Virus record (IMG/VR): IMGVR_UViG_3300044625_001067
Span: 124,001 to 188,000 of that record
Reading direction: 5' to 3' (one strand)
DNA: 64,000 nucleotides
How positions within the stretch are numbered: the first letter of the stretch is position 1; each line of letters starts with the position of its first letter. Below the pieces are notes generated by a model, which was not told where the DNA came from, ran no database searches, and worked only from the letters and a program-made list of their open reading frames with translations. Positions 6,463-17,533 of the stretch are shown here, piece after piece. The translations under genes were made by a program, and so were the position numbers.

Positions 6463-6509
6463 TGTTGTTTAAGTGTGAGGAGATGAATTGGCGTGCCCCC
6501 GAAGGGGAA

Positions 6510-7015: not shown

Positions 7016-7046
7016 GACTTTGTAAGCGAAGGAACTTGGATTGAGA

Positions 7047-7283
7047 TCAGTTAAGCAATAATTGTTCTATTTGACCAAGGATGGACTCTGTATAACCGGC
7101 AATGAAGCCGTAGGCTTGCCTGGGGTCGGTTTCCCCCCGGACCCCTACACAACCGCATTCTGCGCAGTAGTGCTTTTTACGGGGCTTTTTAGGCCCGTCA
7201 GTTTGACCGGACAGAGCCTTGGACCGGGCTTCCTTCTCCGACTGAATGAGTCGGAGGATTTGTTGCTTGGTGGTGTCTTCCAT
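7047..7283 (-). CDS. hypothetical protein with CxxC
   Basis: 78 aa ORF directly after promoter cassette 7290..7354. Confidence 0.7.
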   Translation of the reverse strand: MEDTTKQQILRLIQSEKEARSKALSGQTDGPKKPRKKHYCAECGCVGVRGETDPRQAYGFIAGYTESILGQIEQLLLN

Positions 7284-7289
7284 GCACTT

Positions 7290-7354
7290 ACTATACCGTT
7301 TCTGCGGGGCAGAACCAAGCCGGGAAACCGGCCAAGGAAAGGCGGTTAACCGCC
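7290..7354 (-). promoter_or_regulatory. repeated promoter cassette
   Basis: Distal dyad is the perfect palindrome GGCGGTTAACCGCC (7341-7354); TTGGTT-17-TATAGT. Confidence 0.85.
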
Positions 7355-7409
7355 TTCAACCGAACGGGAACTTACAAACTCTTTTAGCTTCTGCAGGACT
7401 CCTATGGCG

Positions 7410-7775
7410 TTAAATCTGTGAAAAGACCAGGGCCAAGTAAGTGAGTTGGTGAAGAAGCTGGTCAATGCCGATGAGAACCCAGAACTCCTTGTTGGTGGGT
7501 GAGAGCCTTAGGGTTCGAGCGAGATTTTGCTTTAACCAGTCAATGTGATAGTGTAGCACACCATCAATCAACCCTAAGAGGATGGACTCGGTGGGAAAGA
7601 AGGGTAGGAACACGAGCATTGTTGCAAGTGCATGCTTCGCCGAGTGCTGTATTCCAACAGGATGGAGGTAGGTGCCCTTGTGCTTCACCTCGTCGTCTGT
7701 TTGCAACAACCAGTCCACAACAAAGTGCTTGACAAGGAGCAAAGTCACAAGGAGCAAGACTCGTGAGGAATCCAT
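7410..7775 (-). CDS. DUF3307-like membrane protein
   Basis: KHFVVDWLLQT...HSAKHALAT...LHYHIDWLK...IGIDQLLHQL motifs; ATG at 7775 chosen. Confidence 0.8.
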   Translation of the reverse strand: MDSSRVLLLVTLLLVKHFVVDWLLQTDDEVKHKGTYLHPVGIQHSAKHALATMLVFLPFFPTESILLGLIDGVLHYHIDWLKQNLARTLRLSPTNKEFWVLIGIDQLLHQLTYLALVFSQI

Positions 7776-7798
7776 ACAAATACTCGCACTCAAAGATA

Positions 7799-7869
7799 AG
7801 CCCCCAGCGAGAGTTGAACTCGCGTCTCCTCCTTACCAAAGAGGTACTCTGCCACTGAGCTATGGGGGC
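7799..7869 (-). tRNA. trnT: tRNA-Thr (GGT)
   Basis: GCCCCCA/TGGGGGC, loop TT-GGT-AA. Confidence 0.93.
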
Positions 7870-7984
7870 GTTCACCAGGAAGAACCTGGAAACCGGCACG
7901 GTAGCTACATACCTGAGATGCGAAGGCGCATTGCCAGATTTCCACATTGTGAAAACTTTGCCCTTCCTCCAGATTCAGAGCAAA

Positions 7985-8056
7985 TGGGAGATACTGGGAT
8001 CGAACCAGTGACGGCCTGTTTGTAGGACAGGTGCTCTACCGCTGAGCTAATCTCCC
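7985..8056 (-). tRNA. trnV: tRNA-Val (TAC), atypical C33
   Basis: GGGAGAT/ATCTCCC, loop CC-TAC-AA. Confidence 0.9.
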
Positions 8057-8087
8057 GATAAGGGGCAACTTTAATTGCCCGCGTATT

Positions 8088-8282
8088 TCAGTCCAGGAGG
8101 ACAAAAACGGAGTTTTGTATCACGTCCGACCCAAAGAAGACAGGACCGTCCTCCGTATCAAAATTGAAGTACTCAAGATCCTTCAGCTTAGTAGTTAACA
8201 TCTGGGTGAGTTCTTTCCTTTGGTTTAGGTGAAGATCCACATACACGAAGACCCCCATAGGGGTGATTGCTCTGATTTTCAT
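8088..8282 (-). CDS. hypothetical protein
   Basis: 64 aa ORF. Confidence 0.65.
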   Translation of the reverse strand: MKIRAITPMGVFVYVDLHLNQRKELTQMLTTKLKDLEYFNFDTEDGPVFFGSDVIQNSVFVLLD

Positions 8283-8297
8283 CGTTGGCTCTAGGGT

Positions 8298-8537
8298 TCA
8301 GGGGGCGAGTCGAAGGTAGTTAACTACCAGCTCAATAAAGAAGTCGTCGGTGTGCCCGTTCCCATGAATCTGAACAAACTCACGAAGCCGGTTCCGAATC
8401 TCACTGTGAGTTACAGTACCGTTGTCGAGAAGGTCAATTAGCTGTCCAGAAATGGACACGCAAAGCTCGTTCTCTTCACGAGCACTGAGGCACCGAATGC
8501 TGCCGAAGGAAGTTTCAGGCATTGGAGAGGAGTTCAT
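8298..8537 (-). CDS. hypothetical protein, paralog of 14840..15064
   Basis: Shared LSAR.E.ELCVSI.G.L..LL...TH.EI...HGNGH.DDFF. Confidence 0.8.
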   Translation of the reverse strand: MNSSPMPETSFGSIRCLSAREENELCVSISGQLIDLLDNGTVTHSEIRNRLREFVQIHGNGHTDDFFIELVVNYLRLAP

Positions 8538-8724
8538 GCTCGCGGCCTGCCTCGATCCCTGCGTCTAAGAGAGCCATAACAAGGGATAGAAACCTCGCTT
8601 GAGACACAGGGTCTGGGTCAATGTGGCTTTCGGAAAACCGCTTGACACGGTCAAGCAGACCGGGGGTTTCGTTTAGGGGCTTGACACGGTCAAGCAGACC
8701 GGGGGTTTCGTTTAGGGGGTCCAT
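8515..8724 (-). CDS. hypothetical protein with duplicated 13-aa unit
   Basis: PLNETPGLLDRVK twice; follows promoter cassette 8748. Confidence 0.65.
   Translation of the reverse strand: MDPLNETPGLLDRVKPLNETPGLLDRVKRFSESHIDPDPVSQARFLSLVMALLDAGIEAGREHELLSNA
8641..8718. repeat. perfect 39-bp tandem duplication
   Basis: cttgacacggtcaagcagaccgggggtttcgtttagggg at 8641-8679 and 8680-8718. Confidence 0.95.
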
Positions 8725-8747
8725 GGTGCTTTGGTTTCAGCCTAACT

Positions 8748-8812
8748 ACTATAGCGTGTCTGCGGCGCAGAAACAAGGGTGGAAACCGTCCGGGTTGGGG
8801 CGGTAACCCCTG
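8748..8812 (-). promoter_or_regulatory. repeated promoter cassette
   Basis: Two dyads 22 bp apart, TTGTTT-17-TATAGT. Confidence 0.85.
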
Positions 8813-8831
8813 CTATCCAAAGGTTAGGGCC

Positions 8832-9395
8832 TCAAGTTTGAAAACACCCGTAGTAGGCTCGTCCGTAGCACCCGAACTCGGACAGGTTGGTGGTGCAGCC
8901 TGGCTGGCCTATCCACTCATTGAGAGAAACTTCGGTGAGTTCGTGAGGGTGGCCATCGTGGGCAGGAACGTCAACCCACTCGAAAATTCGAAAAATCGGT
9001 GCGGCTCGCAGGGCGTTCCGAATGATTTTGGCGGGGTCTACGGTGTGCTGGAGGCAATTGTACATCCATACCTCGTCCCACCCTTCCTCTTCAATTTCTT
9101 CACCCAACGAAACTGAGACCGAGATATTTTTACTCGCGTACCGGTCAACGGTCCATTGGGGGTAGACAATTGGGTCTACAACTTTCCCTTCAGATAGGTT
9201 TACAGCTTTTAGGAGAAGACTACTCGGGCCACCCCCAATATCAAGGACTCTCTTTCCGGCCACGTCAAAACCGTAGTGAGTCTGACGCAATCCCATTAAT
9301 CGACCGTAGACAAACTGCTTCGTTTCTTCGTCGTAAGTATTGCAACAGTCGCCCCAATAGGCTTTTTCAAACTCATAGTCTTCGTCGTGACTCAT
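8832..9395 (-). CDS. class I SAM-dependent methyltransferase
   Basis: RVLDIGGGPSSLL motif I; ATG at 9395 (MSHDEDYEF). Confidence 0.8.
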   Translation of the reverse strand: MSHDEDYEFEKAYWGDCCNTYDEETKQFVYGRLMGLRQTHYGFDVAGKRVLDIGGGPSSLLLKAVNLSEGKVVDPIVYPQWTVDRYASKNISVSVSLGEEIEEEGWDEVWMYNCLQHTVDPAKIIRNALRAAPIFRIFEWVDVPAHDGHPHELTEVSLNEWIGQPGCTTNLSEFGCYGRAYYGCFQT

Positions 9396-9439
9396 TTTAG
9401 AGTACCGTGGTTTACGGGGGGTTTGCGCTAGCAAAACAA

Positions 9440-9522
9440 TGGGTGTGGTAAGGATTCGAACCTACGTGTGCATAACAAACCGGGTTACAGCCGGTTCCCT
9501 TCGACCGCTCGGGCACACACCC
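9440..9522 (-). tRNA. trnY: tRNA-Tyr (GTA)
   Basis: GGGTGTG/CACACCC, loop CT-GTA-AC, long variable arm. Confidence 0.93.
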
Positions 9523-9556
9523 TTTTACTTTGAGCTGTGACTCAAAGGTTGTACAA

Positions 9557-9605
9557 GATGATTGTTTTTCTACCAAAAAGAAATTTGTGAATCGCTGAAT
9601 CATCT
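9557..9605 (-). repeat. stem-closed CAGCGA loop element, copy 1
   Basis: AGATGATT...AATCATCT stem; identical to the copy at ~10345-10393. Confidence 0.8.
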
Positions 9606-9627
9606 TAGTTTTGCATTCGCAAAACAG

Positions 9628-9699
9628 TCCGAGAGGGGAATTTCGAAATCCCGACTTCTGGTTCCCAAAACCAGCGCTCTTCCTCTGAGCTACCCCCGG
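9628..9699 (-). tRNA. trnP: tRNA-Pro (TGG)
   Basis: CCGGGGG/CTCTCGG, loop TT-TGG-GA. Confidence 0.9.
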
Positions 9700-9759
9700 T
9701 TAGAGCCGTTTCGTCTTATATAGACCCGGACGGACAGACCGGGTGGGGTATTTCCCGAG

Positions 9760-9832
9760 TGGAACCATGGGGTTACGATCCCCATACCCCCTGCTTGCAA
9801 AACAGGTGCTCTACCAATTGAGCTATGGCCCC
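9760..9832 (-). tRNA. trnA: tRNA-Ala (TGC), atypical T loop ATCGTAA
   Basis: G3:U70, loop TT-TGC-AA. Confidence 0.88.
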
Positions 9833-9878
9833 TTGCGCTAAGCGTGTAACTTAGGTGTTTTACCCTACTAGGGGCAAA

Positions 9879-9950
9879 TTGCTCTACCAGGAGTCGAACC
9901 TGGGTCTCCCCCCTTATAATGGGGGCGTCCTACCGTTAGACTATGGAGCG
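9879..9950 (-). tRNA. atypical tRNA with TAT (Ile) anticodon
   Basis: Cloverleaf with CCCCC-ATTATAA-GGGGG arm; C1:A72 and C6:A67 mismatches; D arm identical to the tRNA-Trp here. Confidence 0.75.
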
Positions 9951-10152
9951 GAGCTCTCTTTATGCTAACGACTGCCAATCGTTTCGCAGAGAGGGTTGTT
10001 TACTTGGCGAGTACTCAACCTGGGACTCTCACCCTTTTGCAAGGTTGTTAGTTTCCCTATGCTAAATCCAACTACTTTCAAGGTCGGTGAACTTAGGCAT
10101 TTTCGTCACTTGCTCGGCGAATCCAACCGCTCAGGGCCCATAGCGGTTGGTA

Positions 10153-10224
10153 TCGGAATGGCCGGGATCGAACCGACGACTTCTCGCCCCCCAGACGAGC
10201 GCTCTCCCTCTGAGCTACATTCCG
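10153..10224 (-). tRNA. trnP: tRNA-Pro (GGG)
   Basis: CGGAATG/CATTCCG, loop CT-GGG-GG. Confidence 0.92.
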
Positions 10225-10242
10225 TTATAGACCGTTTACCCG

Positions 10243-10335
10243 CCACGGTCAAGGGGATTTACTTAACTCTCCAGCTAAAACTGTGAGCAGTGTCGGCACC
10301 ACTTTCTAAGTCAGTTCCGAAGCTTGTAACCGTGG
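10243..10335 (-). ncRNA. candidate multibranch structured RNA
   Basis: CCACGGT/ACCGTGG plus CAAG/CTTG closing helix; inner ACTTA/TAAGT, AGTG/CACT and CTC-CAG/CTG-GAG helices. Confidence 0.45.
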
Positions 10336-10344
10336 GGTTAAACA

Positions 10345-10393
10345 AGATGATTGTTTTTCTACCAAAAAGAAATTTGTGAATCGCTGAATCATC
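10345..10393 (-). repeat. stem-closed CAGCGA loop element, copy 2
   Basis: Identical to copy 1. Confidence 0.8.
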
Positions 10394-10433
10394 TTCGAAA
10401 ATGCTATCGCATTTCTACCCTGTTAAGGGAAGA

Positions 10434-10505
10434 TCGGAAATCTCGGCATCGAACCGAGTACTCACGGGCTTCAACCGTGCGCTTTACCCTTCAAGCTCAT
10501 TTCCG
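10434..10505 (-). tRNA. trnF: tRNA-Phe (GAA), atypical (G8, G37)
   Basis: CGGAAAT/ATTTCCG, loop TT-GAA-GC. Confidence 0.85.
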
Positions 10506-10564
10506 TTGTGTCCCAGGTTTGAACCCCGGAAATTTATCACCTTGGGTGGTACCCCGAAGGCAAA

Positions 10565-10635
10565 CTGGGCGCACGGGACTCGAACCCGCAACCTTCCCCA
10601 TCTCAGAGGACGCTCTGCCATTGAGCTAGCACCCA
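10565..10635 (-). tRNA. tRNA, anticodon undetermined
   Basis: Good acceptor (TGGGTGC/GCGCCCA, G73), D and T arms; anticodon arm TCCTC-TGAGAT-GGGGA has a 6-nt loop. Confidence 0.7.
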
Positions 10636-10737
10636 AAACTCCCTAGCACAGTATCTGCAAATACCATTTTAAGGAGGGTTAAGCAATTGCAGTCGCTTCA
10701 CCTGGGGACTTTCACCCGTTTCCCCGGTGTGGGGTCA

Positions 10738-10808
10738 CGATCCTGAGGGGACTCGAACCCCCCTTCACCGGTAGACAGCCGGTGGCCTTCCCTGACGGCA
10801 ACAGGACC
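10738..10808 (-). tRNA. trnD: tRNA-Asp (GTC)
   Basis: GGTCCTG/CAGGATC, loop CT-GTC-TA, G73. Confidence 0.9.
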
Positions 10809-10859
10809 ATATTCCCGGAGTAAATCCGGGAGGGGCCAGGAAACCACTCCTGGACTTTT

Positions 10860-11050
10860 GCTGGGCTAGAGCACAAACCTCGCCCACAGTGAGTTATCGG
10901 CTCATGTCAGGTATCTCACTAACCTTGCACCCCGCTCTTTTTCGTACACGGGGAGTCCCTTGAGCTGGGCACGCTGTATCTTTCTGGTTAGGGGGCCAAC
11001 AGTGCCCTTGCCCGCTTTACTGTATTCCTGACACCGCAACGTGGCGGTCG
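10860..11050 (-). ncRNA. candidate pseudoknotted structured RNA (~190 nt)
   Basis: TGTCAGG/CCTGACA, GGGCAC/GTGCCC, CCCCG/CGGGG, crossing CTAACC/GGTTAG and AGTGAG/CTCACT, TGGGC/GCCCA; no ORF. Confidence 0.55.
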
Positions 11051-11074
11051 GTTCTTGCTTAAGCGTTGAGGCAA

Positions 11075-11148
11075 CACCCTGGGATGGAGTTGAACCATCG
11101 ATCTTCCGGTTCGTAGCCGGACGCTCTAGTCCACTGAGCTACCAGGGC
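11075..11148 (-). tRNA. trnR: tRNA-Arg (ACG)
   Basis: GCCCTGG/CCAGGGT, loop CT-ACG-AA. Confidence 0.93.
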
Positions 11149-11176
11149 ATTGTTTTAAGTTCCCGTTAAGAGAACA

Positions 11177-11258
11177 TACCGACCGAGAGACTCGAACTCT
11201 CACTCCTTTCGGAACCTGATTTTGAGTCAGGCGCGACTACCAATTCCGCCAGGCCGGC
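11177..11258 (-). tRNA. trnL: tRNA-Leu (CAA)
   Basis: GCCGGCC/GGTCGGT, loop CT-CAA-AA, long variable arm. Confidence 0.95.
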
Positions 11259-11333
11259 AATGTTTAAATTTTCAAGTTGCCCCGGAAAACCGGGTCGGGG
11301 GGTGAGAAACAAAGCTCTCTCAACCACTCCTTT

Positions 11334-11378
11334 AGTATAACCGGTTTCGCCGTGGGGCGAAAGGGCGGTTTACCGTCC
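11334..11378 (-). promoter_or_regulatory. promoter cassette heading a tRNA operon
   Basis: Dyad GGCGGTTTACCGTC, TTTCGC-17-TATACT, followed by conserved leader GGTGGTTG...GGCAACTTGAAAATTT. Confidence 0.85.
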
Positions 11379-11393
11379 CTTTGCTGGGGGTCT

Positions 11394-11564
11394 TCAGGTT
11401 AATACGGTGTCCCACACCACCCCAGTAACTGCATCGACAATGTAAATGTCCTCACCAGTTGAGCGGGAAATGTCGCGAGCTGCGTTTATTGCCTCGCCGT
11501 AGCTTGGGTAGCTTTCACCCCCAACAGAATCCCCGGTCACGGCTTTCTTGAGATAAAAGGTCAT
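11394..11564 (-). CDS. hypothetical protein
   Basis: MTFYLKKAV..., downstream of promoter 11588. Confidence 0.6.
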   Translation of the reverse strand: MTFYLKKAVTGDSVGGESYPSYGEAINAARDISRSTGEDIYIVDAVTGVVWDTVLT

Positions 11565-11587
11565 GAGTTTGTTCCGGCTACAGTGCA

Positions 11588-11636
11588 ATCATAGCGCCTT
11601 TCCACCGAAGAGTAAAGGGCGGGTGACCGAACCGCC
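11588..11636 (-). promoter_or_regulatory. repeated promoter cassette
   Basis: TTTACT-17-TATGAT with an adjacent degenerate dyad. Confidence 0.7.
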
Positions 11637-11715
11637 ACCCGAAATTTCTCTCAAGTAGCGGGGTTACGCACCTACTATAGTGCTACCCTGGCAAAGTAAA
11701 CGTGAAACACGCAGG

Positions 11716-11886
11716 TTAGAGGTAAGCGGAGCCAAGGATCACTTGTTCGCTCAGTTCATTAGTTCTCTTCAAGACTTGAGCAGCTTTTAGGAACTTTAAC
11801 GCCACTATGGGGTTAAGCCCACGAGATTGCTTGTACTTCCCCATTAAAGAAAGGTAAAGTTTTTCCGAGTTAGTTAATGTATTCAT
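11716..11886 (-). CDS. hypothetical protein
   Basis: MNTLTNSEKLYLSL..., ATG at 11886. Confidence 0.6.
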   Translation of the reverse strand: MNTLTNSEKLYLSLMGKYKQSRGLNPIVALKFLKAAQVLKRTNELSEQVILGSAYL

Positions 11887-11905
11887 GAGGGGTTCTTTAG
11901 AAGAC

Positions 11906-13066
11906 TTACACACCCTTGTATAGGAGGCTAACTAGATCTTTAGCGTCCGCTTCCGAAAGTTTGGACCAAGGGCCTTGCTCAAAAGTCTTGAGTGGGGATT
12001 GTGTACCATGCATATATAGGGCAACCACCTCGTCTTCTGACAAACCGAACTTTTCTTTTAGTTGCTTATCAACTTGAAACCTGTTTCTTCTAACAGTTCC
12101 CAGTATAGGAAGGTCTTCTTCCAACTTTTTCACGGAGGGCTTCATACTAGCTTTGTCTACTCTATGCATACCCATGACTTTCCACTCACGGGTTTGCCAA
12201 TTTCCGTAATTACCTAAAATAGCTCCTGTAGCATCCGCAGGAACTAGGGCTTCTGACCCTTTCCCGTGCTCCATGCCGGGGAAGTAGAAGGCACCAAGGG
12301 ACTCGGCCAAGGAAGCTTTAAAGCTTTGTTGGGAAAGCCCGAAGTCCACCCACCTCCCCTTTCCTGTCTTCTCTTCTACAAACAGGTTTCCTGGGTGTGC
12401 GTCGTTGTGAGCTACACCTAGTCGATGGAGGTCTGCCAAAGCTTTCCAATAAATATCGGCTGCAGGTGTGCCGGATACTTTTTGTTCGGGATTAGTAGCG
12501 AGAGACTCTATATCTCGCCCTGGAACTTTAGTCATGGCTATTCTACCGTGCCTCAACCCCAAGTGCTCCATGCCCATTTCGTCTGTTCCTTGAGTCTTCA
12601 ATCTGCCGTTTAAGTCAGCGGCTATTAAGTCCGGGCCGAGATCTTTAGCTCCTACTTTCTTTAAAATACTTGCCTCATTCTCTCCGAGAATTCCTCTCTT
12701 TATATATTGCCCCTTTTCGTTCACGGTTACGAACCCGTAAGCACCGCGTCCGGCCACCTGAGCTACGCTGCCTTTCTTGTCGGACCAGTCTTCAAAATCA
12801 GGGTTACCTGTTCTTTTGAGAATTTTGCTCTCAAGTTTTTTGTCATAACTATGCTCGTTGGACATATCCCAATCTTCTCGTCTTGTTGCGGTATCCTTGA
12901 TTTTATTAGTTTTATCTACGTCTTTCGTTGCATTACCAGAAAGTTTATCCTCAATGGAAATCAAAGACTTTGAAACTTGTGGACTAAGAGTTGCAGAACA
13001 CTTTTTAGAACTTTGAACACAGGATGCCCCACAACTCTTTCCGGCTTTACAATTCTTCTTAGTCAT
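11906..13066 (-). CDS. protein kinase-like protein with N-terminal Cys motif
   Basis: GRGAYG Gly loop, LHRLGVAHNDAHPGN catalytic loop, VDFGL; N-terminal CKAGKSCGASCVQSSKKC. Confidence 0.85.
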   Translation of the reverse strand: MTKKNCKAGKSCGASCVQSSKKCSATLSPQVSKSLISIEDKLSGNATKDVDKTNKIKDTATRREDWDMSNEHSYDKKLESKILKRTGNPDFEDWSDKKGSVAQVAGRGAYGFVTVNEKGQYIKRGILGENEASILKKVGAKDLGPDLIAADLNGRLKTQGTDEMGMEHLGLRHGRIAMTKVPGRDIESLATNPEQKVSGTPAADIYWKALADLHRLGVAHNDAHPGNLFVEEKTGKGRWVDFGLSQQSFKASLAESLGAFYFPGMEHGKGSEALVPADATGAILGNYGNWQTREWKVMGMHRVDKASMKPSVKKLEEDLPILGTVRRNRFQVDKQLKEKFGLSEDEVVALYMHGTQSPLKTFEQGPWSKLSEADAKDLVSLLYKGV

Positions 13067-13121
13067 GTGTGTTTGCGCCGATAGCTTAACTTACCCTTAC
13101 GAGTGATCTTTTAGTTCTGTA

Positions 13122-13192
13122 CACGTGGTAGAGGATTCGAACCCCTACGGGGAGTTTTGGAGACTCCAGTCCTACCGTTAGACGAACCACGT
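13122..13192 (-). tRNA. trnW: tRNA-Trp (CCA)
   Basis: ACGTGGT/ACCACGT, loop CT-CCA-AA. Confidence 0.92.
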
Positions 13193-13216
13193 AGGTTTGA
13201 GTTTCGCGTTAGCGAA

Positions 13217-13298
13217 AGCGGGTAACAGGATTCGAACCTGCGTGAACTATTCGCCTCTTGTTTGGAAAACAAGTGCTCTACCGCTGAGCTATACCCGC
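13217..13298 (-). tRNA. trnG: tRNA-Gly (TCC) with 15-nt variable arm
   Basis: GCGGGTA/TACCCGC, loop TT-TCC-AA, variable region AGGCGAATAGTTCAC. Confidence 0.9.
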
Positions 13299-13329
13299 AT
13301 TTTACTTGAGTTTTTTCGTGAGAGAAAAG

Positions 13330-13402
13330 AGCGGTCGACGTGACTCGAACACGCGACTTTCTACTTGGAAGGAAGACACTCTACCGACTGAGTTACGACC
13401 GC
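13330..13402 (-). tRNA. trnG: tRNA-Gly (TCC)
   Basis: GCGGTCG/CGACCGC, loop CT-TCC-AA. Confidence 0.9.
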
Positions 13403-13438
13403 ATTTTGCTTTAGTGTAATTTTCGCGTAAGCGAAAAG

Positions 13439-13511
13439 GGTGATAGACGGGACTCGAACCCGCTAATTACTGGTTCACAACCAGTTGCCCATCCCTTAGG
13501 CTTCTACCACC
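13439..13511 (-). tRNA. trnH: tRNA-His (GTG)
   Basis: Encoded G-1:C73 pair, loop TT-GTG-AA. Confidence 0.92.
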
Positions 13512-13542
13512 ATTGTAGGGGAGTTTCTGACTAATTTAAGCT

Positions 13543-13589
13543 AGATGATTGTGTTTCCAATAACGAAGGAGTTAATTGCTGAATCATCT
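13543..13589 (-). repeat. stem-closed CAGCAA loop element, copy 3 (diverged interior)
   Basis: Same AGATGATT-CAGC.A...AATCATCT frame with a different inner sequence. Confidence 0.7.
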
Positions 13590-13610
13590 ACTTTTCTGCA
13601 GAGCAGAAAA

Positions 13611-13684
13611 TGGCGGACCGGGGAATTGAACCCCTGTTCCTCTGGGTTATGGGCCCAGCGTGACTACCGTGACACTCGTCCGCG
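13611..13684 (-). tRNA. trnfM: initiator-type tRNA-fMet (CAT), C33
   Basis: Unpaired C1:C72, GGG/CCC anticodon stem, loop CC-CAT-AA. Confidence 0.82.
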
Positions 13685-13735
13685 TTACACCTATACTATA
13701 GCGTTTTTAGCTAGGAGTAAACTTCTCAAGGCAAG

Positions 13736-13806
13736 TTCCTAAGATAGGATTCGAACCTATATAATCTCCTTCAAAGGGAGGTGTCCTTCCGTTAGACGAC
13801 TCAGGA
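13736..13806 (-). tRNA. trnQ: tRNA-Gln (TTG)
   Basis: TCCTGAG/CTTAGGA (U1:A72), loop CT-TTG-AA. Confidence 0.88.
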
Positions 13807-13881
13807 TCGGCTGCCTTAAGTAGGGAGGCTATTATAGCCCCCTAAGATGAAAGTAAACTCTTGGCTAAGGTAGCAAGGAAA

Positions 13882-14000
13882 GGAGCAAGGTTGGACTTGA
13901 ACCAACGGCTTGCTTTGCCCTCCAGCGTTACGGTCCTTTACCGAGGGTCTCTTGCGAGACTCAGAGGAGGTTGCCGCTCTACCAACTGAGCTACTTGCTC
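13882..14000 (-). ncRNA. tRNA-like RNA A (anticodon arm replaced by branched domain)
   Basis: Perfect acceptor GAGCAAG/CTTGCTC, canonical D and T arms, ~65-nt insert with two hairpins. Confidence 0.8.
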
Positions 14001-14050
14001 TTTGCACCCTGAATTAAGTCAAGGAGCTAGAGTTCTCCGTAAAGAGAACA

Positions 14051-14132
14051 TACCCGCCGGGAGACTCGAACTCCCACGCCTTTCGGCACTAGTTCCTAAA
14101 ACTAGCGTATATACCAGTTTCACCAGGCGGGC
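14051..14132 (-). tRNA. trnL: tRNA-Leu (TAG)
   Basis: GCCCGCC/GGCGGGT, loop TT-TAG-GA. Confidence 0.94.
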
Positions 14133-14160
14133 TTGACTGTGATCCCTATGAAAGGGAAAG

Positions 14161-14232
14161 AGCGAACGAAGGGATTTGAACCCTCGACATTCTCGTTGGC
14201 AACGAGGTACTCTACCGCTGAGTTACGTTCGC
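14161..14232 (-). tRNA. trnG: tRNA-Gly (GCC)
   Basis: GCGAACG/CGTTCGC, loop TT-GCC-AA. Confidence 0.95.
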
Positions 14233-14274
14233 ATTGCTCCTTGGAGCAGTTTTCTTCTGCTTTTACAGAAGGTA

Positions 14275-14362
14275 CGGAGAGAACAGGAATCGAACCTGCG
14301 CAGGGGGTCTCCCCCCTGTAACCGTTTTCAAGACGGTCTCCTCGTCCAGCCGGACTCTCTCC
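14275..14362 (-). tRNA. trnS: tRNA-Ser (TGA), atypical D arm
   Basis: GGAGAGA/TCTCTCC, loop CT-TGA-AA, 7-bp variable stem with GAGA loop. Confidence 0.88.
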
Positions 14363-14411
14363 AGTTACCGTAGCACGGTAAGTTTTAGCTAGAAAACCGG
14401 AAGGTTTTCAA

Positions 14412-14570
14412 TGGGAAATGTTGGATTTGAACCAACGCTCTCTCAACTGATCAGGTTGTGAGCGTGCTGTTACAAAGGCGAAGGTCGGGGATCAATCCGC
14501 CATTCGACACTCGTACTGAAGCACTCACCTGGGTAATGTGCCCAGGGCTCTACCGCTGAGCTAATTTCCC
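14412..14570 (-). ncRNA. tRNA-like RNA B (~95-nt variable region)
   Basis: Acceptor GGGAAAT/ATTTCCC, canonical D and T arms, arm CCTGGG-CACATTA-CCCAGG, large structured insert. Confidence 0.8.
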
Positions 14571-14637
14571 GTTAACTCTGTTGACCGGAATTGAATCGGT
14601 CCCTGAACGTGCTGCCGTTTTTCTGCAAAGCAGAAAA

Positions 14638-14709
14638 TGGGGCATCTCGGATTCGAACCGAGGACTGACCGGTTAAAAGCCGGATACTCTACCGCTGAGT
14701 TAATGCCCC
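14638..14709 (-). tRNA. trnK: tRNA-Lys (TTT)
   Basis: GGGGCAT/ATGCCCC, loop CT-TTT-AA. Confidence 0.95.
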
Positions 14710-14792
14710 CCGTATTAAATTTTCAAGTTGCCTTTTGCTTTCGCAAAAGCGGGGAGGAGGTGAAGGCGAAGCCCTCTCTCAACCACCCCTTT

Positions 14793-14836
14793 AGTATAAC
14801 CGGTTTCGCCGAAAGGTGAAAGGGCGGGAAACCGCC
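14793..14836 (-). promoter_or_regulatory. promoter cassette heading a tRNA operon
   Basis: Dyad GGCGGGAAACCGCC, TTTCAC-17-TATACT, conserved leader. Confidence 0.85.
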
Positions 14837-14839
14837 GTA

Positions 14840-15064
14840 TCAAAGGGTGAACTCAAATACAACCTTGCGAACAAAGAAATCGTCAAGGTGCCCGTTGCCG
14901 TACATCCTGACGCAGTCCTGCAGCTTCGCAAGAATCTCGTCGTGGGTGGGAGCGGATGCCCCCTCTTCCAAAAGCTCGGTGAGTTCTCCAGCGATGGAGA
15001 CACAAAGTTCGTGCTCCTTACGAGCACTCAACCCTTTAAGGGTGCCGAAAGTTGCTTGAGCCAT
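14840..15064 (-). CDS. hypothetical protein, paralog of 8298..8537
   Basis: ATG 15064 (MAQATFGTLKGLSARKEHELCVSI). Confidence 0.8.
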   Translation of the reverse strand: MAQATFGTLKGLSARKEHELCVSIAGELTELLEEGASAPTHDEILAKLQDCVRMYGNGHLDDFFVRKVVFEFTL

Positions 15065-15095
15065 TTTGACTTGGAGGACCAACGGTAACAATTTA

Positions 15096-15161
15096 AGTTT
15101 AGCTGGTTTCACCGTGAAGCGAAAGGGTGGGAAACCGCCCCGGTTCGTTCGGTTAACTGAG
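15096..15161 (-). promoter_or_regulatory. repeated promoter cassette
   Basis: TTTCGC-17-TAAACT with dyads upstream. Confidence 0.7.
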
Positions 15162-15176
15162 CGAGTCACGGAGCAA

Positions 15177-15247
15177 AGCCCTGCCAGGGAATCGAACCCT
15201 GCTCTGCAGTTTACAAAACTGCTGCATCACCACAATGCTTGAAGGGC
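15177..15247 (-). tRNA. trnT: tRNA-Thr (TGT)
   Basis: Loop TT-TGT-AA; one acceptor mismatch. Confidence 0.85.
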
Positions 15248-15277
15248 ATTTTCCTTGTAGTTCTTCGGGGAGAACAA

Positions 15278-15366
15278 CGGAAGATGTGAGATTCGAACTC
15301 ACGGAGCTGCTTGCGCAGCTCAACGGTTTAGCAAACCGTCGCCTTCAACCACTCGGCCAATCTTCC
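15278..15366 (-). tRNA. trnS: tRNA-Ser (GCT)
   Basis: GGAAGAT/ATCTTCC, loop TT-GCT-AA, long variable arm. Confidence 0.94.
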
Positions 15367-15386
15367 AAAATTTCTCGTTAGAGAAA

Positions 15387-15459
15387 TTGCCCCAACCGGA
15401 TTCGAACCGGTATTTCCACCTTGAGAGGGTAGCGACCTAAGCCATTAGTCGATGAGGCC
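15387..15459 (-). tRNA. trnE: tRNA-Glu (CTC)
   Basis: Loop CT-CTC-AA, G1:A72 mismatch. Confidence 0.88.
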
Positions 15460-15496
15460 GTTTTCTGCGAAAAACAGAGAGTTTGCTTAAGCAAAG

Positions 15497-15569
15497 TAGG
15501 AATGACAGGATTCGAACCTGTGTATCTCGGTAATCGGCCGAAGGTATTAGGCCACTATACGACATTCTC
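15497..15569 (-). tRNA. trnI: atypical tRNA-Ile (GAT), C33/U37
   Basis: Loop CC-GAT-TA, weak acceptor end. Confidence 0.7.
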
Positions 15570-15630
15570 AGAAAACGAGCAGTTACGTATGATGCTCAGC
15601 ACAGGTTCCCCAGCAAAAGGGCTGAGAGGA

Positions 15631-15702
15631 TGGGAGCACTCGGGAACGACCCGAGGGCCTTTTCCGTGTCAAAGAAACGCTCTACCACTGAGCTATGCTC
15701 CC
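15631..15702 (-). tRNA. trnV: tRNA-Val (GAC), atypical T loop GTCGTTC
   Basis: GGGAGCA/TGCTCCC, loop TT-GAC-AC. Confidence 0.87.
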
Positions 15703-15813
15703 AACCGGAGCAGTCACGCTCCGTACCTAGTTTCCTATAATTGCCTACTCGTGTCATCGCGGAAGTTGACGAAACTTCTAGAACTTTCGGCTCAAGTGGT
15801 GTTAGGCACCTGA

Positions 15814-15968
15814 TTAAAGTGGAGAGACTCGAACTCCCATAGCAGGATTACGTCTAGCTGTCACCTGCACGGTGGTTGCAACCATGAGCTAGGAGGTTGC
15901 TATTTGTTCACAACCCCATCCGTATTGGCTGAATCCACACCGCCGTATACCAATTCCGGCACACTTTG
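15814..15968 (-). ncRNA. tRNA-like RNA C (Leu-type body, expanded anticodon and variable arms)
   Basis: AAAGTG/CACTTT acceptor, Leu-type D arm CCG-GAATTGGTATA-CGG, T arm GGGAG-TTCGAGT-CTCTC, ~65-nt insert closed by GGTG/CACC, GCAGG/CCTGC variable stem. Confidence 0.78.
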
Positions 15969-16027
15969 TTCTTAGCGTTTGAGGAGAACCTGAAGTAGGT
16001 CCCTCTTCTTTCTCTCTGTAAGAGAAA

Positions 16028-16100
16028 CTGGAGTGGGAGGGTTCGAACCTCCAACGAAGCGGTTAACAGCCGCACGATCTGCCAATTGATCTACACCCCA
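16028..16100 (-). tRNA. trnN: tRNA-Asn (GTT)
   Basis: TGGGGTG/CACTCCA, loop CT-GTT-AA. Confidence 0.92.
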
Positions 16101-16252
16101 TTGAGCCCTGCATTACGGCAGAGGGTACTAAGAAGCACTCCGGGGTCGCGAGCGTCCCCATACGAGTAGGAATCGTTACTGAAACCGGTTATTACTGTCC
16201 CTTAAGTTGCAAACCGACAACCTCGCTTAAGGAATTTTCGCGAGTGCGAAAA

Positions 16253-16325
16253 TGGAGACAATCGGAATTGAACCGATCACAAGTCGCTTGCGAAGCGTCC
16301 TCGCCACCCTGGAACATGTGCCCCC
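16253..16325 (-). tRNA. trnA: tRNA-Ala (CGC), atypical D arm
   Basis: G3:U70, loop TT-CGC-AA. Confidence 0.8.
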
Positions 16326-16431
16326 GTTTTCCTATCGGAAAACAAAAGTTAGCCGATAGGGGACAGAGCGTCTCACCTCTGCGAGGAACGTTTCAGTTCG
16401 TTTTCCCCTTAGGGAAGTTGCCCGAAGGCAA

Positions 16432-16504
16432 TGGGTTTGGTGGGATTCGAACCCACAACATACCGGGTAAGAGCCGGTTACTCTGCCAATTGAGCTACAA
16501 ACCC
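16432..16504 (-). tRNA. trnK: tRNA-Lys (CTT)
   Basis: GGGTTTG/CAAACCC, loop CT-CTT-AC. Confidence 0.94.
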
Positions 16505-16567
16505 GAACCCCAAGTTTAGAAAGCACCATCGCAGGTACTTGGGCAACCTTTTTCGCTAACGCGAAAA

Positions 16568-16640
16568 TGGGAACGGCCTGATTTGAACAGGCGGCCTATC
16601 GGTTATCAACCGATTGCTCTTACCGCTGAGCTACGCTCCC
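16568..16640 (-). tRNA. trnI: tRNA-Ile (GAT)
   Basis: GGGAGCG/CGTTCCC, loop TT-GAT-AA. Confidence 0.93.
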
Positions 16641-16715
16641 TTGGTACTAAATTGTCAAGTTGCCCCCCGGAAACCGGGTCAGTAAGGAAAGCGGAAGCTT
16701 TCCAACCACCCCTTT

Positions 16716-16759
16716 AGTATAACCGGTTTTGCCGTAGGGCGAAAGGGCGGTTTACCGCC
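16716..16759 (-). promoter_or_regulatory. promoter cassette heading a tRNA operon
   Basis: Dyad GGCGGTTTACCGCC, TTTCGC-17-TATACT, conserved leader. Confidence 0.85.
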
Positions 16760-16817
16760 CCCTTCACCCCTGGTCAACATTGAAGTATTCACTCAGGAAT
16801 GCTTGCGTAAGCAAACA

Positions 16818-16892
16818 TGGCGAGAGGCAGGATTTGAACCTGCGATCTCCAGCTTATGAGACTGGCGAGATACCGGGCTTCTCCACTCCGCT
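16818..16892 (-). tRNA. trnM: tRNA-Met (CAT)
   Basis: Loop CT-CAT-AA; acceptor needs a 1-nt bulge. Confidence 0.82.
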
Positions 16893-16948
16893 ATAAAGAC
16901 CTAGTATTTCAGTTCGGTTTTCGTTTTACGAAAAATGCCCAAGGGCAA

Positions 16949-17056
16949 TGGGTATGGACAGGATTCGAACCTGCAATGCCAGAGGCGACTGCTGTACTTA
17001 CAGCCCACTATTCCCAAGAACCGTGTACACAATTCCTGCTTCAGTGAGACATACCC
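16949..17056 (-). ncRNA. tRNA-like RNA D (Tyr-derived, expanded D arm, 4-nt anticodon loop)
   Basis: GGGTATG/CATACCC acceptor, T arm GCAGG-TTCGAAT-CCTGT, long hairpin in the D position, GCTGT-AAGT-ACAGC arm, GCC-TCT-GGC variable arm. Confidence 0.72.
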
Positions 17057-17079
17057 GTGAAGTTTCCGATAGGAAACAA

Positions 17080-17162
17080 TGGGAGCGGTAGGATTCGAAC
17101 CTACGAAGCATTGAGCAACCGGGTTACAGCCGGTCTCCTTTGACCACTCGGAGAACACTCCC
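17080..17162 (-). tRNA. trnY: tRNA-Tyr (GTA)
   Basis: GGGAGTG/CGCTCCC, loop CT-GTA-AC. Confidence 0.93.
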
Positions 17163-17169
17163 ATTTTGC

Positions 17170-17358
17170 TCTGCAGACACTGCTTTGGGTTGAGCCACCC
17201 CCTACTTTGTATCTCTAAAGTAGTAAAATAGGTTCTTCTAATTGCGGTTTTAACCGCATAACGAGAGAAGTTTTTGGATTTCGAAGAAACCTTTGCACCC
17301 CTTAAACTACCCAAGCATGGAGCTCAGGGGCTGAGTCGAACAGCCATTTCTCTCTTTT
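17170..17358 (-). ncRNA. possible circularly permuted tRNA-like/tmRNA-like element
   Basis: Orphan T arm GGCTG-TTCGACT-CAGCC followed by ...GAGCTCCA; downstream GGGGTGCAAAGGTTTC and several hairpins. Confidence 0.35.
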
Positions 17359-17377
17359 ATTTTCGCGTGAGCGAAAA

Positions 17378-17458
17378 TGGGTCAGGTGGGACTCGAACCC
17401 ACGGTGTTTGTATATCCGGTTAAAAGCCGGGACCTGTCGCCGCTAAGGTAACTGACCC
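17378..17458 (-). tRNA. trnK: atypical tRNA-Lys (TTT) with 12-nt variable loop
   Basis: GGGTCAG/CTGACCC, loop CT-TTT-AA, variable TATACAAACACC. Confidence 0.8.
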
Positions 17459-17533
17459 ATGGTGTTAAATTGTCAAGTTGCCTCCCGCAAGAGCGGAAGC
17501 GAGGCGGAAGCCGAGCTTCCCAACCACCCCTTT

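What the first reader, a model, noticed from the sequence alone, without database searches (positions are those of the whole stretch)
14412..14570. tRNA-like RNA B: CAT-centred arm plus pseudoknotted ~95-nt variable region
After a canonical D arm comes CCTGGG-CACATTA-CCCAGG (7-nt loop, CAT at the anticodon positions, A at position 33). Then a long helix TGAG-TGCT...AGCA-CG-CTCA encloses GTCG...GGCG...CGAC...CGCC, an interleaved order consistent with an H-type pseudoknot. A CAAC-CTGATCA-GTTG hairpin and the T arm follow. It could be a Met/Ile-anticodon tRNA with a huge appended domain that affects ribosome behaviour (inference).
Basis: partly seen in the sequence, partly recalled or inferred. 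Interest (0 to 1): 0.72.

Follow-up and report, generated by a model that had tools for sequence, protein, structure and literature searches.

The report
Oversized tRNA-shaped RNA in cyanophage
This is a real tRNA-derived gene in a giant freshwater phage that carries about 90 extra bases which stay in its RNA, but it comes and goes between strains, the claimed pseudoknot is no better than chance, and it is probably a tRNA look-alike rather than a working decoder.

Summary
Window 14412-14570 (minus strand) is a genuine tRNA-derived gene in the tRNA array of a 277-kb cyanophage-like jumbo myovirus. Rfam's tRNA model matches it end to end (44.8 bits, cut-off 29); ARAGORN misses it. Acceptor stem, D arm and T arm are canonical. 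Between D and T arms lie about 110 nt: H1, an initiator-type anticodon stem-loop (three G-C pairs, CAU, but A33); H2, a 61-nt irregular hairpin; H3, a second anticodon-like hairpin (loop CUGAUCA) in canonical register with the T arm.

The H-type pseudoknot does not stand: 56% of shuffles show an equivalent one, its ensemble probability is about 0, and no pair covaries.

Contigs from three metatranscriptomes span the whole gene with the insert retained. The phage encodes no RtcB or splicing endonuclease.

The locus is accessory. Of 32 related contigs, 15 carry it full-length (four alleles, one with two helix-breaking changes), 7 carry a 70-nt internal deletion and 10 lack it.

Best reading: a non-decoding, tRNA-shaped stable RNA, possibly decaying. 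A functional tRNA mimic is not excluded.

Side finding: elsewhere the phage encodes a Ro60-like protein followed by conserved Y-RNA-like, tRNA-shaped RNAs.

The parts
14412..14570 (-). Whole tRNA-like gene B (159 nt; 3' CCA not encoded)
   Evidence: RF00005 44.8 bits, model positions 1-71. Whole-RNA fold -58.5 kcal/mol, z -3.97. Not called by ARAGORN.
14564..14570 (-). Acceptor stem 5' strand GGGAAAU. It pairs with 14413-14419 (AUUUCCC). The discriminator A is at 14412.
   Evidence: Seven Watson-Crick pairs, G1-C72 paired. Allele 4 has an A5/A154 mismatch.
14547..14561 (-). D arm GCUC-AGCGGUA-GAGC
   Evidence: Matches the Rfam consensus. The only variation is in the loop (U19C in allele 2).
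14528..14546 (-). H1: CCUGGG-CACAUUA-CCCAGG, an initiator-type anticodon stem-loop (three G-C pairs plus CAU) with A33. Position 37 is U here and A in alleles 2 and 3.
   Evidence: Ensemble probability 0.8. An in-silico construct keeping only H1 is called tRNA-Met(cat) by ARAGORN.
14464..14524 (-). H2: 61-nt irregular hairpin closed by GUGCU/AGCAC.
   Evidence: Closing helix probability 0.94-0.99. H2 alone has z -1.96. Invariant in alleles 1-3; G66U in allele 4.
14501..14508 (-). GUCGAAUG, which matches the YrlA-type motif GNCGAAN0-1G. It lies on the 5' strand of H2.
   Evidence: It is the only one of nine long tRNA-like RNAs examined that has the motif. The genome-wide frequency of the motif is 6.7e-4 per nt, so about 0.06-0.1 is expected by chance in B. 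The motif is described in PMC4201824. It is destroyed in allele 4.
14437..14463 (-). H3: GCUC-A-CAAC-CUGAUCA-GUUG-AGA-GAGC, a second anticodon-like arm (U33, GAU, C37) followed directly by the T arm
   Evidence: Ensemble probabilities 0.92-0.96. Deletion of the CA bulge in allele 3 and in B' gives a perfect 6-bp stem. A construct keeping only H3 is called tRNA-Ile(gat).
14420..14436 (-). T arm GUUGG-UUCAAAU-CCAAC
   Evidence: Rfam alignment. All allele differences lie in the loop, which reads UUCGAAU, UUCGAGU or UUCGAUU.
14393..14408 (-). 3' trailer hairpin AAAACC-UUCC-GGUUUU
   Evidence: Read from the sequence. The RNA-run contig X26 runs from 14571 to 14378, that is from the 5' end of B through this hairpin. 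The consensus scan did not call it a terminator.
14793..14820 (-). Promoter-like site (TTCACC-16-TATACT) inside a repeated spacer element, upstream of Lys(ttt)-B-Ser(tga)
   Evidence: a consensus match only. The highest RNA-run depth in the stretch is at 14780-14833. The element is repeated in the array.

Best explanation
B is a tRNA-derived gene that no longer works as an ordinary decoder. It is a tRNA-shaped stable RNA.

Shown:
- It sits in a 34-gene tRNA array of a cyanophage-like jumbo myovirus.
- It keeps a canonical acceptor stem, D arm and T arm.
- It carries about 90 extra nucleotides between the D and T arms, folded as three hairpins (H1, H2, H3).
- RNA-seq assemblies from three lakes contain the whole RNA with the extra part still in it.
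- The locus is accessory: present, internally deleted or absent among near-identical phage strains.

Inferred:
- The gene arose from a Met/initiator-like tRNA gene by insertion or illegitimate recombination, in an array that visibly undergoes such events.
- The intact tRNA chassis lets RNase P and the 3'-end machinery mature and stabilise the RNA.
- The anticodon-like loops (A33 in H1, C37 in H3) are not used for normal decoding.

Whether the RNA is now a neutral, slowly decaying relic or a mimic or decoy that displays an initiator-type anticodon arm cannot be decided. I weight the two about equally.
For: tRNA chassis: RF00005 44.8 bits end to end.

Phage context: tail sheath, portal, topoisomerase II and a DNA polymerase (PHROG matches) 57% identical to that of Synechococcus phage S-CBWM1, where it is annotated as polymerase gamma. 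The record is 277 kb and 98% complete.

Insert retained in RNA: one contig in each of three metatranscriptomes spans both junctions (14386-14623, 14429-14609, 14378-14571). No joint skips the insert, and the flanking canonical tRNAs have about zero depth.

No splicing machinery: no RtcB and no tRNA-intron endonuclease in the phage. No Rfam intron or ribozyme match at E up to 10.

Non-decoder features: A33 (0 of 49 other tRNAs of the phage have A there) and U37/A37 polymorphism in H1; C37 in H3 (0 of 49).

Some constraint: the 91-nt insert is identical between allele 1 and allele 2. Spacers differ by 12% over the region and by 4.4% next to B, giving P(0 changes) of about 1e-5 and about 0.02 respectively. 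All differences among alleles 1-3 fall in loops or a bulge.

Accessory and unstable: 15 contigs full-length, 7 with positions 19-90 replaced by CUUC, 10 without the gene; also absent in G002, a relative with 87% polymerase identity. Allele 4 carries two uncompensated helix-breaking changes.

Array-wide decay and recombination: T-arm remnants and a collapsed copy of RNA A in G002, and a B/Ser(tga) fusion in L122.
Against: The RNA evidence is weak. Logan contigs from RNA libraries can contain DNA, and one run (X19) also has a contig spanning several tRNAs and spacers. A mature spliced 72-nt tRNA would be invisible in such libraries.

Conservation of the insert may reflect recent common descent rather than selection, since all alleles are at least 97% identical.

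No experiment or homologue outside this phage lineage is available.

U33 substitutions reduce decoding but do not always abolish it (my own knowledge), so decoding is not excluded.
Confidence: 0.55

Rival explanations
1. One reading: B is a working elongator tRNA (Met, or Ile after lysidine modification of C34). It decodes with the CAU loop of H1 and carries a giant appended domain in its variable region that modifies its behaviour on the ribosome.
For: The chassis is canonical and the discriminator is A. H1 follows the D arm in canonical register, and a construct with H1 alone is called tRNA-Met(cat). Allele 2 has the loop CACAUAA, one base away from the canonical CUCAUAA. G1-C72 is paired, as in elongators. 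The insert is retained in RNA. Other tRNAs of this phage also carry deviant anticodon loops (C33, U37), which in other phages are thought to evade anticodon nucleases (PMC10264068).
Against: A33 is found in none of the 49 other tRNAs. Position 37 is not conserved. A 91-nt, two-hairpin domain is 4-5 times longer than any class II variable arm (my own knowledge). The phage already has two tRNA-Met(cat) and two tRNA-Ile(tat) genes. The gene is dispensable, and its commonest derivative has lost H1 altogether.
Confidence: 0.12
2. B is a functional tRNA mimic: a stable RNA whose expanded centre is the working part. One version is a decoy that presents an initiator-type anticodon arm to a host tRNA-targeting nuclease or to the 30S P site. 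Another is a Y-RNA-like partner of a Ro60-type protein.
For: H1 has the three consecutive G-C pairs plus CAU that define initiator anticodon arms (PMC5389676, PMC6393288), and none of 97 other phage tRNAs has them. B carries GUCGAAUG, which matches the YrlA motif GNCGAAN0-1G, in a bulged helix. The phage encodes a Ro60-like protein with tRNA-shaped RNAs next to it. The insert is invariant across alleles 1-3. Phage tRNA clusters are known to encode stable RNAs of unknown role, such as T4 RNAC and RNAD (PMC3014915).
Against: The motif is expected by chance about 6-10% of the time. It lies on the strand running away from the tRNA core, which by my reading is opposite to YrlA. It is lost in allele 4. 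B is 78 kb from the Ro60-like gene and lacks the module shared by the RNAs next to that gene. Rfam's YrlA model does not match. The locus is frequently lost or truncated. No binding test was possible.
Confidence: 0.2
3. The extra sequence is an intron. It is removed by self-splicing or by an unknown enzyme to give a normal 72-nt tRNA: either Met(CAU) using H1 or Ile(GAU) using H3.
For: Removing either B43-129 or B26-110 in silico gives a sequence that ARAGORN calls a tRNA. Cyanobacteria are known for group I introns in tRNA genes (PMC3984707). Standard RNA-seq would not capture the mature tRNA.
Against: The insert is not in the anticodon loop. At 87-91 nt it is far below group I intron size. 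There is no Rfam intron or ribozyme hit, and no RtcB or splicing endonuclease. ARAGORN's own intron solution needs a mismatched stem. All three RNA-run contigs keep the insert and no skipping joint is seen. The resulting tRNAs would still have A33 or C37.
Confidence: 0.06

Closest known systems
Canonical bacterial/phage tRNA (Rfam RF00005), in particular tRNA-Met/initiator tRNA
   Same: Seven-bp acceptor stem, U8, A14, G18G19, D arm, T arm with a UUCRANU loop, and discriminator A. H1 matches an initiator anticodon arm (GGGC-N-CAUAACCC in allele 2).
   Different: About 110 nt lie between the D and T arms instead of about 26. There are two anticodon-like arms. H1 has A33 and H3 has C37. G1-C72 is paired and C11-G24 is elongator-like, so it is not an initiator by its acceptor or D-stem features.
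Class II tRNAs (Leu, Ser, Tyr, Sec) with long variable arms
   Same: Extra structured RNA between the anticodon arm and the T arm.
   Different: Class II arms are a single hairpin of roughly 13-21 nt (my own knowledge). Here the extra RNA is 91 nt with two hairpins, one of them anticodon-arm-like.
Bacterial and phage Y RNAs (YrlA), the tRNA-mimicking partners of Ro60/Rsr (PMC4201824)
   Same: A tRNA-like D arm, T arm and acceptor module joined to a long bulged helix carrying GNCGAAN0-1G. YrlA occurs in phages. The M. smegmatis YrlA is cut by RNase P and receives CCA.
   Different: In B the RNA ends lie in the acceptor stem, not in the Ro-binding stem. B is not next to a Ro60 gene, gets no Rfam YrlA hit, and lacks the module carried by this phage's own Ro60-adjacent RNAs.
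T4 RNAC and RNAD, stable small RNAs encoded in the T4 tRNA cluster (PMC3014915, PMC9697503)
   Same: Non-tRNA stable RNAs of 100-150 nt that are transcribed and processed with a phage tRNA cluster. Their function is unknown.
   Different: No sequence relationship was tested or expected. B keeps a complete tRNA chassis.
Cyanobacterial tRNA genes with group I introns (tRNA-Leu UAA, tRNA-fMet; PMC3984707)
   Same: An interrupted tRNA gene in the cyanobacterial and cyanophage world, with a CAU anticodon.
   Different: Group I introns sit in the anticodon loop, are longer than 200 nt and are recognised by Rfam. None of this holds for B.

Membership tests
tRNA (RF00005) | Covariance-model score above the gathering threshold over the full model | tested here: met
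   44.8 bits against a cut-off of 29, model positions 1-71.
tRNA (RF00005) | One anticodon arm with a 5-bp stem and a 7-nt loop having U33 and a purine at 37 | tested here: not met
   H1 has A33 and U37 (A37 in alleles 2 and 3). H3 has U33 but C37. Among the 49 other tRNAs of the phage none has A33 or C37.
tRNA (RF00005) | Total length 70-95 nt, detected by a standard tRNA finder | tested here: not met
   159 nt. ARAGORN in default mode does not call it. In intron mode it gives a strained Val(cac) solution.
Bacterial initiator tRNA | Three consecutive G-C pairs (29-31:39-41) and a CAU anticodon | tested here: met
   CUGGG/CCCAG with CAU. 0 of 97 other phage tRNAs have GGG/CCC there. The feature is defined in PMC5389676 and PMC6393288.
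Bacterial initiator tRNA | A mismatch at 1:72 (needed for formylation) | tested here: not met
   G1-C72 is a Watson-Crick pair in all four alleles.
Class II tRNA | A single variable-arm hairpin of about 13-21 nt | tested here: not met
   91 nt containing two hairpins.
tRNA with group I intron | An intron in the anticodon loop with a group I core | tested here: not met
   Both anticodon-like loops are intact 7-mers. No Rfam intron hit at E up to 10.
tRNA with archaeal-type (BHB) intron | Splicing endonuclease and RtcB ligase available | tested here: not met
   PF01974 and PF01139 are absent from the 98%-complete phage genome, and the control genomes respond as expected. The host genome is unknown.
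tmRNA | Detected by ARAGORN or Rfam tmRNA models; G3-U70 alanine identity | tested here: not met
   No tmRNA call at this site. G3-C70 is present. ARAGORN calls a permuted tmRNA elsewhere in the phage genome.
YrlA / Y RNA | GNCGAAN0-1G motif plus tRNA-like D and T arms | tested here: met
   GUCGAAUG at B63-70. Chance expectation is about 0.06-0.1 per B. It is lost in allele 4.
YrlA / Y RNA | Encoded within about 4 kb of a Ro60 gene on the same strand; match to the YrlA covariance model | tested here: not met
   The Ro60-like gene is at G000:62134-63612, 78 kb away. There is no RF02553 hit on B, and the module model R1 does not hit B.
YrlA / Y RNA | Bound by Ro60/Rsr | not testable with these tools
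H-type pseudoknot | Two interleaved helices supported beyond chance by energy or covariation | tested here: not met
   56% of shuffles have an equivalent. Ensemble probability is about 0. 0 covarying pairs and one uncompensated break. ViennaRNA cannot score pseudoknots, so the energy part of the test is indirect.

The most novel reading that the evidence does not exclude
B is a functional tRNA mimic of a new architecture. A complete tRNA chassis matures and protects the RNA. Its centre displays an initiator-type anticodon arm and a YrlA-like bulged helix (GNCGAANG). The phage would use it to engage a Ro60/Rsr-type RNA-surveillance complex, or to decoy a host factor that recognises initiator tRNA, such as an anticodon nuclease or the 30S P site.
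Probability: 0.15. Interest if true: 0.7.

Novelty: new variant of a known kind. Interest (0 to 1): 0.4.

Why it matters
Phage tRNA arrays are usually read as codon-supply or anti-defence devices made of ordinary tRNAs. B shows that such arrays also produce larger, tRNA-shaped RNAs that standard finders skip. ARAGORN misses four of them in this one genome.

If B is functional, it would be a natural example of a tRNA chassis carrying a cargo domain and an initiator-type anticodon arm. That bears on how phages interact with host tRNA-targeting defences or translation initiation.

If B is a relic, it documents how quickly tRNA genes in phage arrays are rearranged, truncated and lost. Here that happens next to a homing-endonuclease-like gene.

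The side finding may matter more. A conserved Ro60-like protein with adjacent Y-RNA-like, tRNA-shaped RNAs appears in a large group of cyanophage-like viruses.

Tried and rejected
1. Homologues of B outside its own lineage: none found.
- Exact and gapped DNA patterns in IMG/VR gave nothing relevant. Of 70 hits, only an unrelated 140-nt tRNA-like RNA in L056/L072 was a single gene.
- blastn of the insert against GenBank phages found no match.
- A GTDB pattern scan gave three chance hairpins.
- Whole-record searches of nine related IMG/VR phages found B in none.

2. Repeat or mobile-element origin: the insert has no other copy in the genome.

3. Intron models: ARAGORN's intron mode gives inconsistent, strained solutions. 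There is no RtcB, splicing endonuclease, ribozyme or intron hit.

4. Fusion of two neighbouring tRNAs: H1 and H3 are unrelated in sequence. The middle is too short and shows only a faint T-loop-like GGAUUGAUCC. The perfect acceptor pairing would need explaining. I could neither support nor exclude this.

5. tmRNA-like reading: an open frame of 23 codons runs from B49 to the UGA in the H3 loop, but there is no alanine identity and no tmRNA model hit. Rejected.

6. Membership in the Ro60-adjacent module family: covariance model R1 finds nothing at B or A. The best window hit is E 0.24, at 13573-13593.

It is not evidence either way.

8. A kinase-like ORF in the array was used to fetch relatives, and none were found.

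9. The genome search 'relatives' is not available for virus records, so the host's initiator tRNA was not compared directly.

Full report
CONTEXT

The window is bases 124001-188000 of a 277-kb IMG/VR virus record that is 98% complete. It encodes a tail sheath, a portal, topoisomerase II and a DNA polymerase (PHROG matches). The polymerase is 57% identical to that of Synechococcus phage S-CBWM1, where it is annotated as polymerase gamma, and all 11 phage records that match it are cyanophages. Runs that hold the sequence are lake-water metagenomes. The record is therefore a cyanophage-like jumbo myovirus from fresh water.

The minus strand of window 660-17459 carries 34 tRNA genes called by ARAGORN. 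The whole genome gives 55 matches to Rfam's tRNA model.

THE OBSERVATION

Read on the minus strand, 14570 to 14412 matches RF00005 over the full model at 44.8 bits (cut-off 29), with about 87 extra nucleotides in the anticodon/variable region. ARAGORN does not call it.

I number RNA positions as p = 14571 minus the window coordinate. The parts are:
- Acceptor stem, GGGAAAU (1-7) paired with AUUUCCC (152-158). The discriminator A is at 159, and CCA is not encoded.
- D arm, positions 10-24.
- H1, CCUGGG-CACAUUA-CCCAGG, positions 25-43.
- H2, a 61-nt irregular hairpin closed by GUGCU/AGCAC, positions 47-107.
- H3, GCUC-A-CAAC-CUGAUCA-GUUG-AGA-GAGC, positions 108-134.
- T arm, positions 135-151.

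The whole RNA folds at -58.5 kcal/mol, z -3.97. Most of that comes from the tRNA arms. The 92-nt insert alone has z -1.5 and H2 alone has z -2.0.

The pseudoknot is a different matter:
- The four segments GUCG, GGCG, CGAC and CGCC occur in interleaved order.
- But 564 of 1000 dinucleotide shuffles of the insert contain an equivalent interleaved pair of 4-bp helices with at least 3 G-C pairs.
- In the ensemble both helices have probability about 0, because a nested register wins: CGAA/UUCG and GGCGG with CCGCC-like partners.
- The proposed UGAG/CUCA extension has probability 0.01, against 0.94 for the competing GCUC/GAGC.

WHICH ARM IS THE ANTICODON ARM?

H1 follows the D arm after one nucleotide, as an anticodon arm should. 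H3 is followed by five nucleotides (AGAGC) and then the T arm, as an anticodon arm should be. In-silico constructs keeping only H1 or only H3 are both called tRNAs by ARAGORN, as Met(cat) and Ile(gat) respectively. The extra RNA can therefore be read as an insertion 3' of one anticodon arm or 5' of the other.

Neither loop is canonical:
- H1 has A33, and U37 in this allele. H3 has C37.
- Among the phage's 49 ARAGORN tRNAs, position 33 is U in 47 and C in 2, and never A.
- Position 37 is a purine in 46 and U in 3, and never C.

H1 is nevertheless distinctive. Its stem has G29-31 paired with C39-41 and its loop carries CAU. That is the conserved signature of initiator anticodon arms (PMC5389676, PMC6393288). 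None of 97 other tRNAs from this phage and two relatives has that stem. B is not an initiator by its other end, because G1-C72 is paired.

IS THE INSERT REMOVED?

Three metatranscriptome runs each contain one assembled contig covering B with the insert: window 14386-14623, 14429-14609 and 14378-14571. No joint skips the insert. The neighbouring ordinary tRNAs, Ser(tga) and Lys(ttt), have essentially no depth in those runs. One contig ends one base before the predicted 5' end of B.

These are contigs from RNA libraries, not proof of a mature RNA. A spliced 72-nt tRNA would not be seen in such data. Still, the RNA-seq-visible species keeps the insert.

The phage has no RtcB and no tRNA-splicing endonuclease. 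Rfam finds no intron or ribozyme in or around B. ARAGORN's intron mode yields only a strained solution.

RELATIVES AND ALLELES

B has no counterpart in GenBank phages, in IMG/VR by pattern, in GTDB genomes or in nine related IMG/VR records. In G002, whose polymerase is 87% identical, the array is syntenic but B is missing. The gap there holds three T-arm remnants.

I used a metagenome pattern scan and the neighbouring 74-aa gene as a handle. Counting the window, this gave 32 contigs of this lineage:
- 15 carry full-length B, in four alleles.
- 7 carry an 89-nt derivative, B', in which positions 19-90 are replaced by CUUC. It has lost half of the D arm, all of H1 and most of H2.
- 10 go straight from Lys(ttt) to Ser(tga) with no B.

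Six of the seven B' contigs carry a DUF559 endonuclease-like gene in place of the Leu(tag) region, either called or seen as a 958-nt replacement; the seventh, L144, ends before that region. One full-length allele 3 contig (L141) carries the gene too.

Differences among alleles 1-3 are U19C (D loop), U36A (H1 loop, giving CACAUAA), A143G and A145G (T loop), and loss of the CA bulge in H3. That loss makes a perfect 6-bp stem. Allele 4 is known from one contig. It has G66U in H2 and an A5/A154 mismatch in the acceptor stem, and neither is compensated. Across the four alleles, none of 42 tested pairs covaries.

Between allele 1 and allele 2 the 91-nt insert is identical. Spacers differ by 12% across the region and by about 4.4% right next to B. 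This is modest evidence of constraint, or of recent shared descent.

INTERPRETATION

The evidence fits a tRNA-derived gene that keeps everything needed to be transcribed, cut out and stabilised like a tRNA. Its decoding centre has been replaced by a three-hairpin domain. The array around it is visibly in flux:
- G002 holds tRNA remnants and a collapsed copy of RNA A.
- L122 holds a B/Ser(tga) fusion.
- An endonuclease-like gene comes and goes between strains.

Homing endonucleases in phage tRNA clusters are known to drive such turnover; T4 SegB is cited in PMC8421152. I therefore take B to be a non-decoding, tRNA-shaped stable RNA. I cannot decide between a neutral relic and a functional mimic.

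Two features keep the mimic reading alive. One is the initiator-type arm. The other is GUCGAAUG at positions 63-70, which matches the motif GNCGAAN0-1G thought to mark Ro60 binding in bacterial Y RNAs (PMC4201824). In the predicted fold it lies in a bulged helix.

The motif would occur by chance in about 6-10% of such RNAs. It is lost in allele 4, and by my reading its orientation relative to the tRNA core is opposite to that in YrlA.

SIDE FINDING

ARAGORN misses three other long tRNA-like RNAs in this genome.

RNA A (window 13882-14000) has a three-way junction where the anticodon loop should be. One of its hairpins shows two compensatory double changes in strain L112.

Two more lie at G000:59854-59965 and G000:60765-60886, 1.2-2.3 kb downstream of a 492-aa DUF2828+DUF7788 protein on the same strand. 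The twelve best structural matches of that protein are all Ro60/TROVE proteins, aligned over their full length. The model is of moderate quality (pLDDT 65).

These RNAs share a module: a covarying hairpin followed by ACAGCAAU. The module sits in three different tRNA chassis. RNAs of about 120 nt carrying the same module lie directly downstream of homologues of that protein that are only 64-66% identical to it. They look like Y-RNA-type partners. A covariance model of the module does not hit B or A.

VERDICT

The gene and its hairpins are real. The pseudoknot is not supported. The decoder interpretation is unlikely. The RNA is a lineage-restricted, accessory, tRNA-shaped RNA of unknown and possibly fading function.

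Noticed in passing
G000:59854-59965(-), G000:60765-60886(-) and G000:62134-63612(-), outside the window (L134 7855-7966, 8766-8887, 10135-11613); also L135 5687-5806 and L139 5656-6153: A 492-aa DUF2828+DUF7788 protein has Ro60/TROVE proteins as its 12 best fold matches. It is followed on the same strand by 112-122-nt tRNA-shaped RNAs. Their anticodon region holds a conserved module: a covarying hairpin GGUUAUCUNG...AGAUAC followed by (GG)ACAGCAAU. The same arrangement occurs next to homologues only 64-66% identical to it, and the protein has more than 7600 homologues. These are probably phage Y-RNA-like partners of a divergent Ro60.
   Followed up: partly
window 13882-14000 (-): A second long tRNA-like RNA ('A', 119 nt, RF00005 45.4 bits) that ARAGORN misses. 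Its anticodon loop is replaced by a CCUCC/GGAGG-closed junction with two hairpins. One hairpin (GCAA loop) shows two compensatory double substitutions in strain L112 and in RNA run X19. In G002 the gene is collapsed to a 5'-3' remnant.
   Followed up: partly
window 14001-14160, compared with L108, L113-L117 and L141: In some strains the stretch holding tRNA-Leu(tag) is replaced by about 958 nt carrying a DUF559 (Vsr-like endonuclease fold) gene. Where the contig reaches that far, these strains carry the truncated B' or allele 3, and flanks about 11% diverged. This fits homing-endonuclease-driven gene conversion in the tRNA array.
   Followed up: partly
window 14715-14836 (-); similar copies near 16648-16764 and elsewhere in the array: A repeated spacer element of about 120 nt contains a promoter-like site (14793-14820). 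It has the highest RNA-run depth in the stretch that was laid. It may be a repeated promoter or a small RNA.
   Followed up: no
G000:104340-104723 (-), outside the window: ARAGORN calls a permuted (two-piece) tmRNA in the phage genome. Related loci L135 and L139 give sub-threshold hits to the cyano_tmRNA and tmRNA_permuted models inside their tRNA arrays.
   Followed up: no
window 7985-8056, 10737-10809 and 15496-15569; G000:43675-43747: Several otherwise normal phage tRNAs have deviant anticodon loops: Val(tac) with C33, Ile(gat) with C33 and U37, and two Asp(gtc) with U37. This recalls the anticodon-loop changes proposed to evade host anticodon nucleases (PMC10264068).
   Followed up: no
window 9879-9950 and G000:55147-55236: There are two tRNA-Ile(UAU) genes. 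The second is 90 nt long with a long variable arm, which is unusual for Ile.
   Followed up: no
L036 1432-1579 (G002) and L122 about 2000-2040: tRNA gene debris. G002 has three orphan T-arm remnants in one spacer. In L122 the 3' end of B is fused directly to the T arm of Ser(tga). Deletions between tRNA genes are therefore frequent in this array.
   Followed up: partly
window 21739-23226 and 23614-25101 (+): Two paralogous 495-aa proteins with a Tet/JBP 2OG-Fe(II) oxygenase domain (PF12851). One also has a weak queuine tRNA-ribosyltransferase-like PHROG hit. They are possible DNA base-modification genes.
   Followed up: no
window 11906-13066 (-): A 386-aa ORF embedded in the tRNA array has weak, sub-threshold protein-kinase/ABC1/APH-like hits. 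No relatives were found in IMG/VR by pattern search.
   Followed up: partly
L056 8293-8432 and L072 12035-12174 (unrelated IMG/VR contigs): Another 140-nt single-gene tRNA-like RNA, with a perfect acceptor stem and T arm and an insert of about 70 nt. It turned up in the D-arm...T-arm pattern scan and is unrelated in sequence to B.
   Followed up: no
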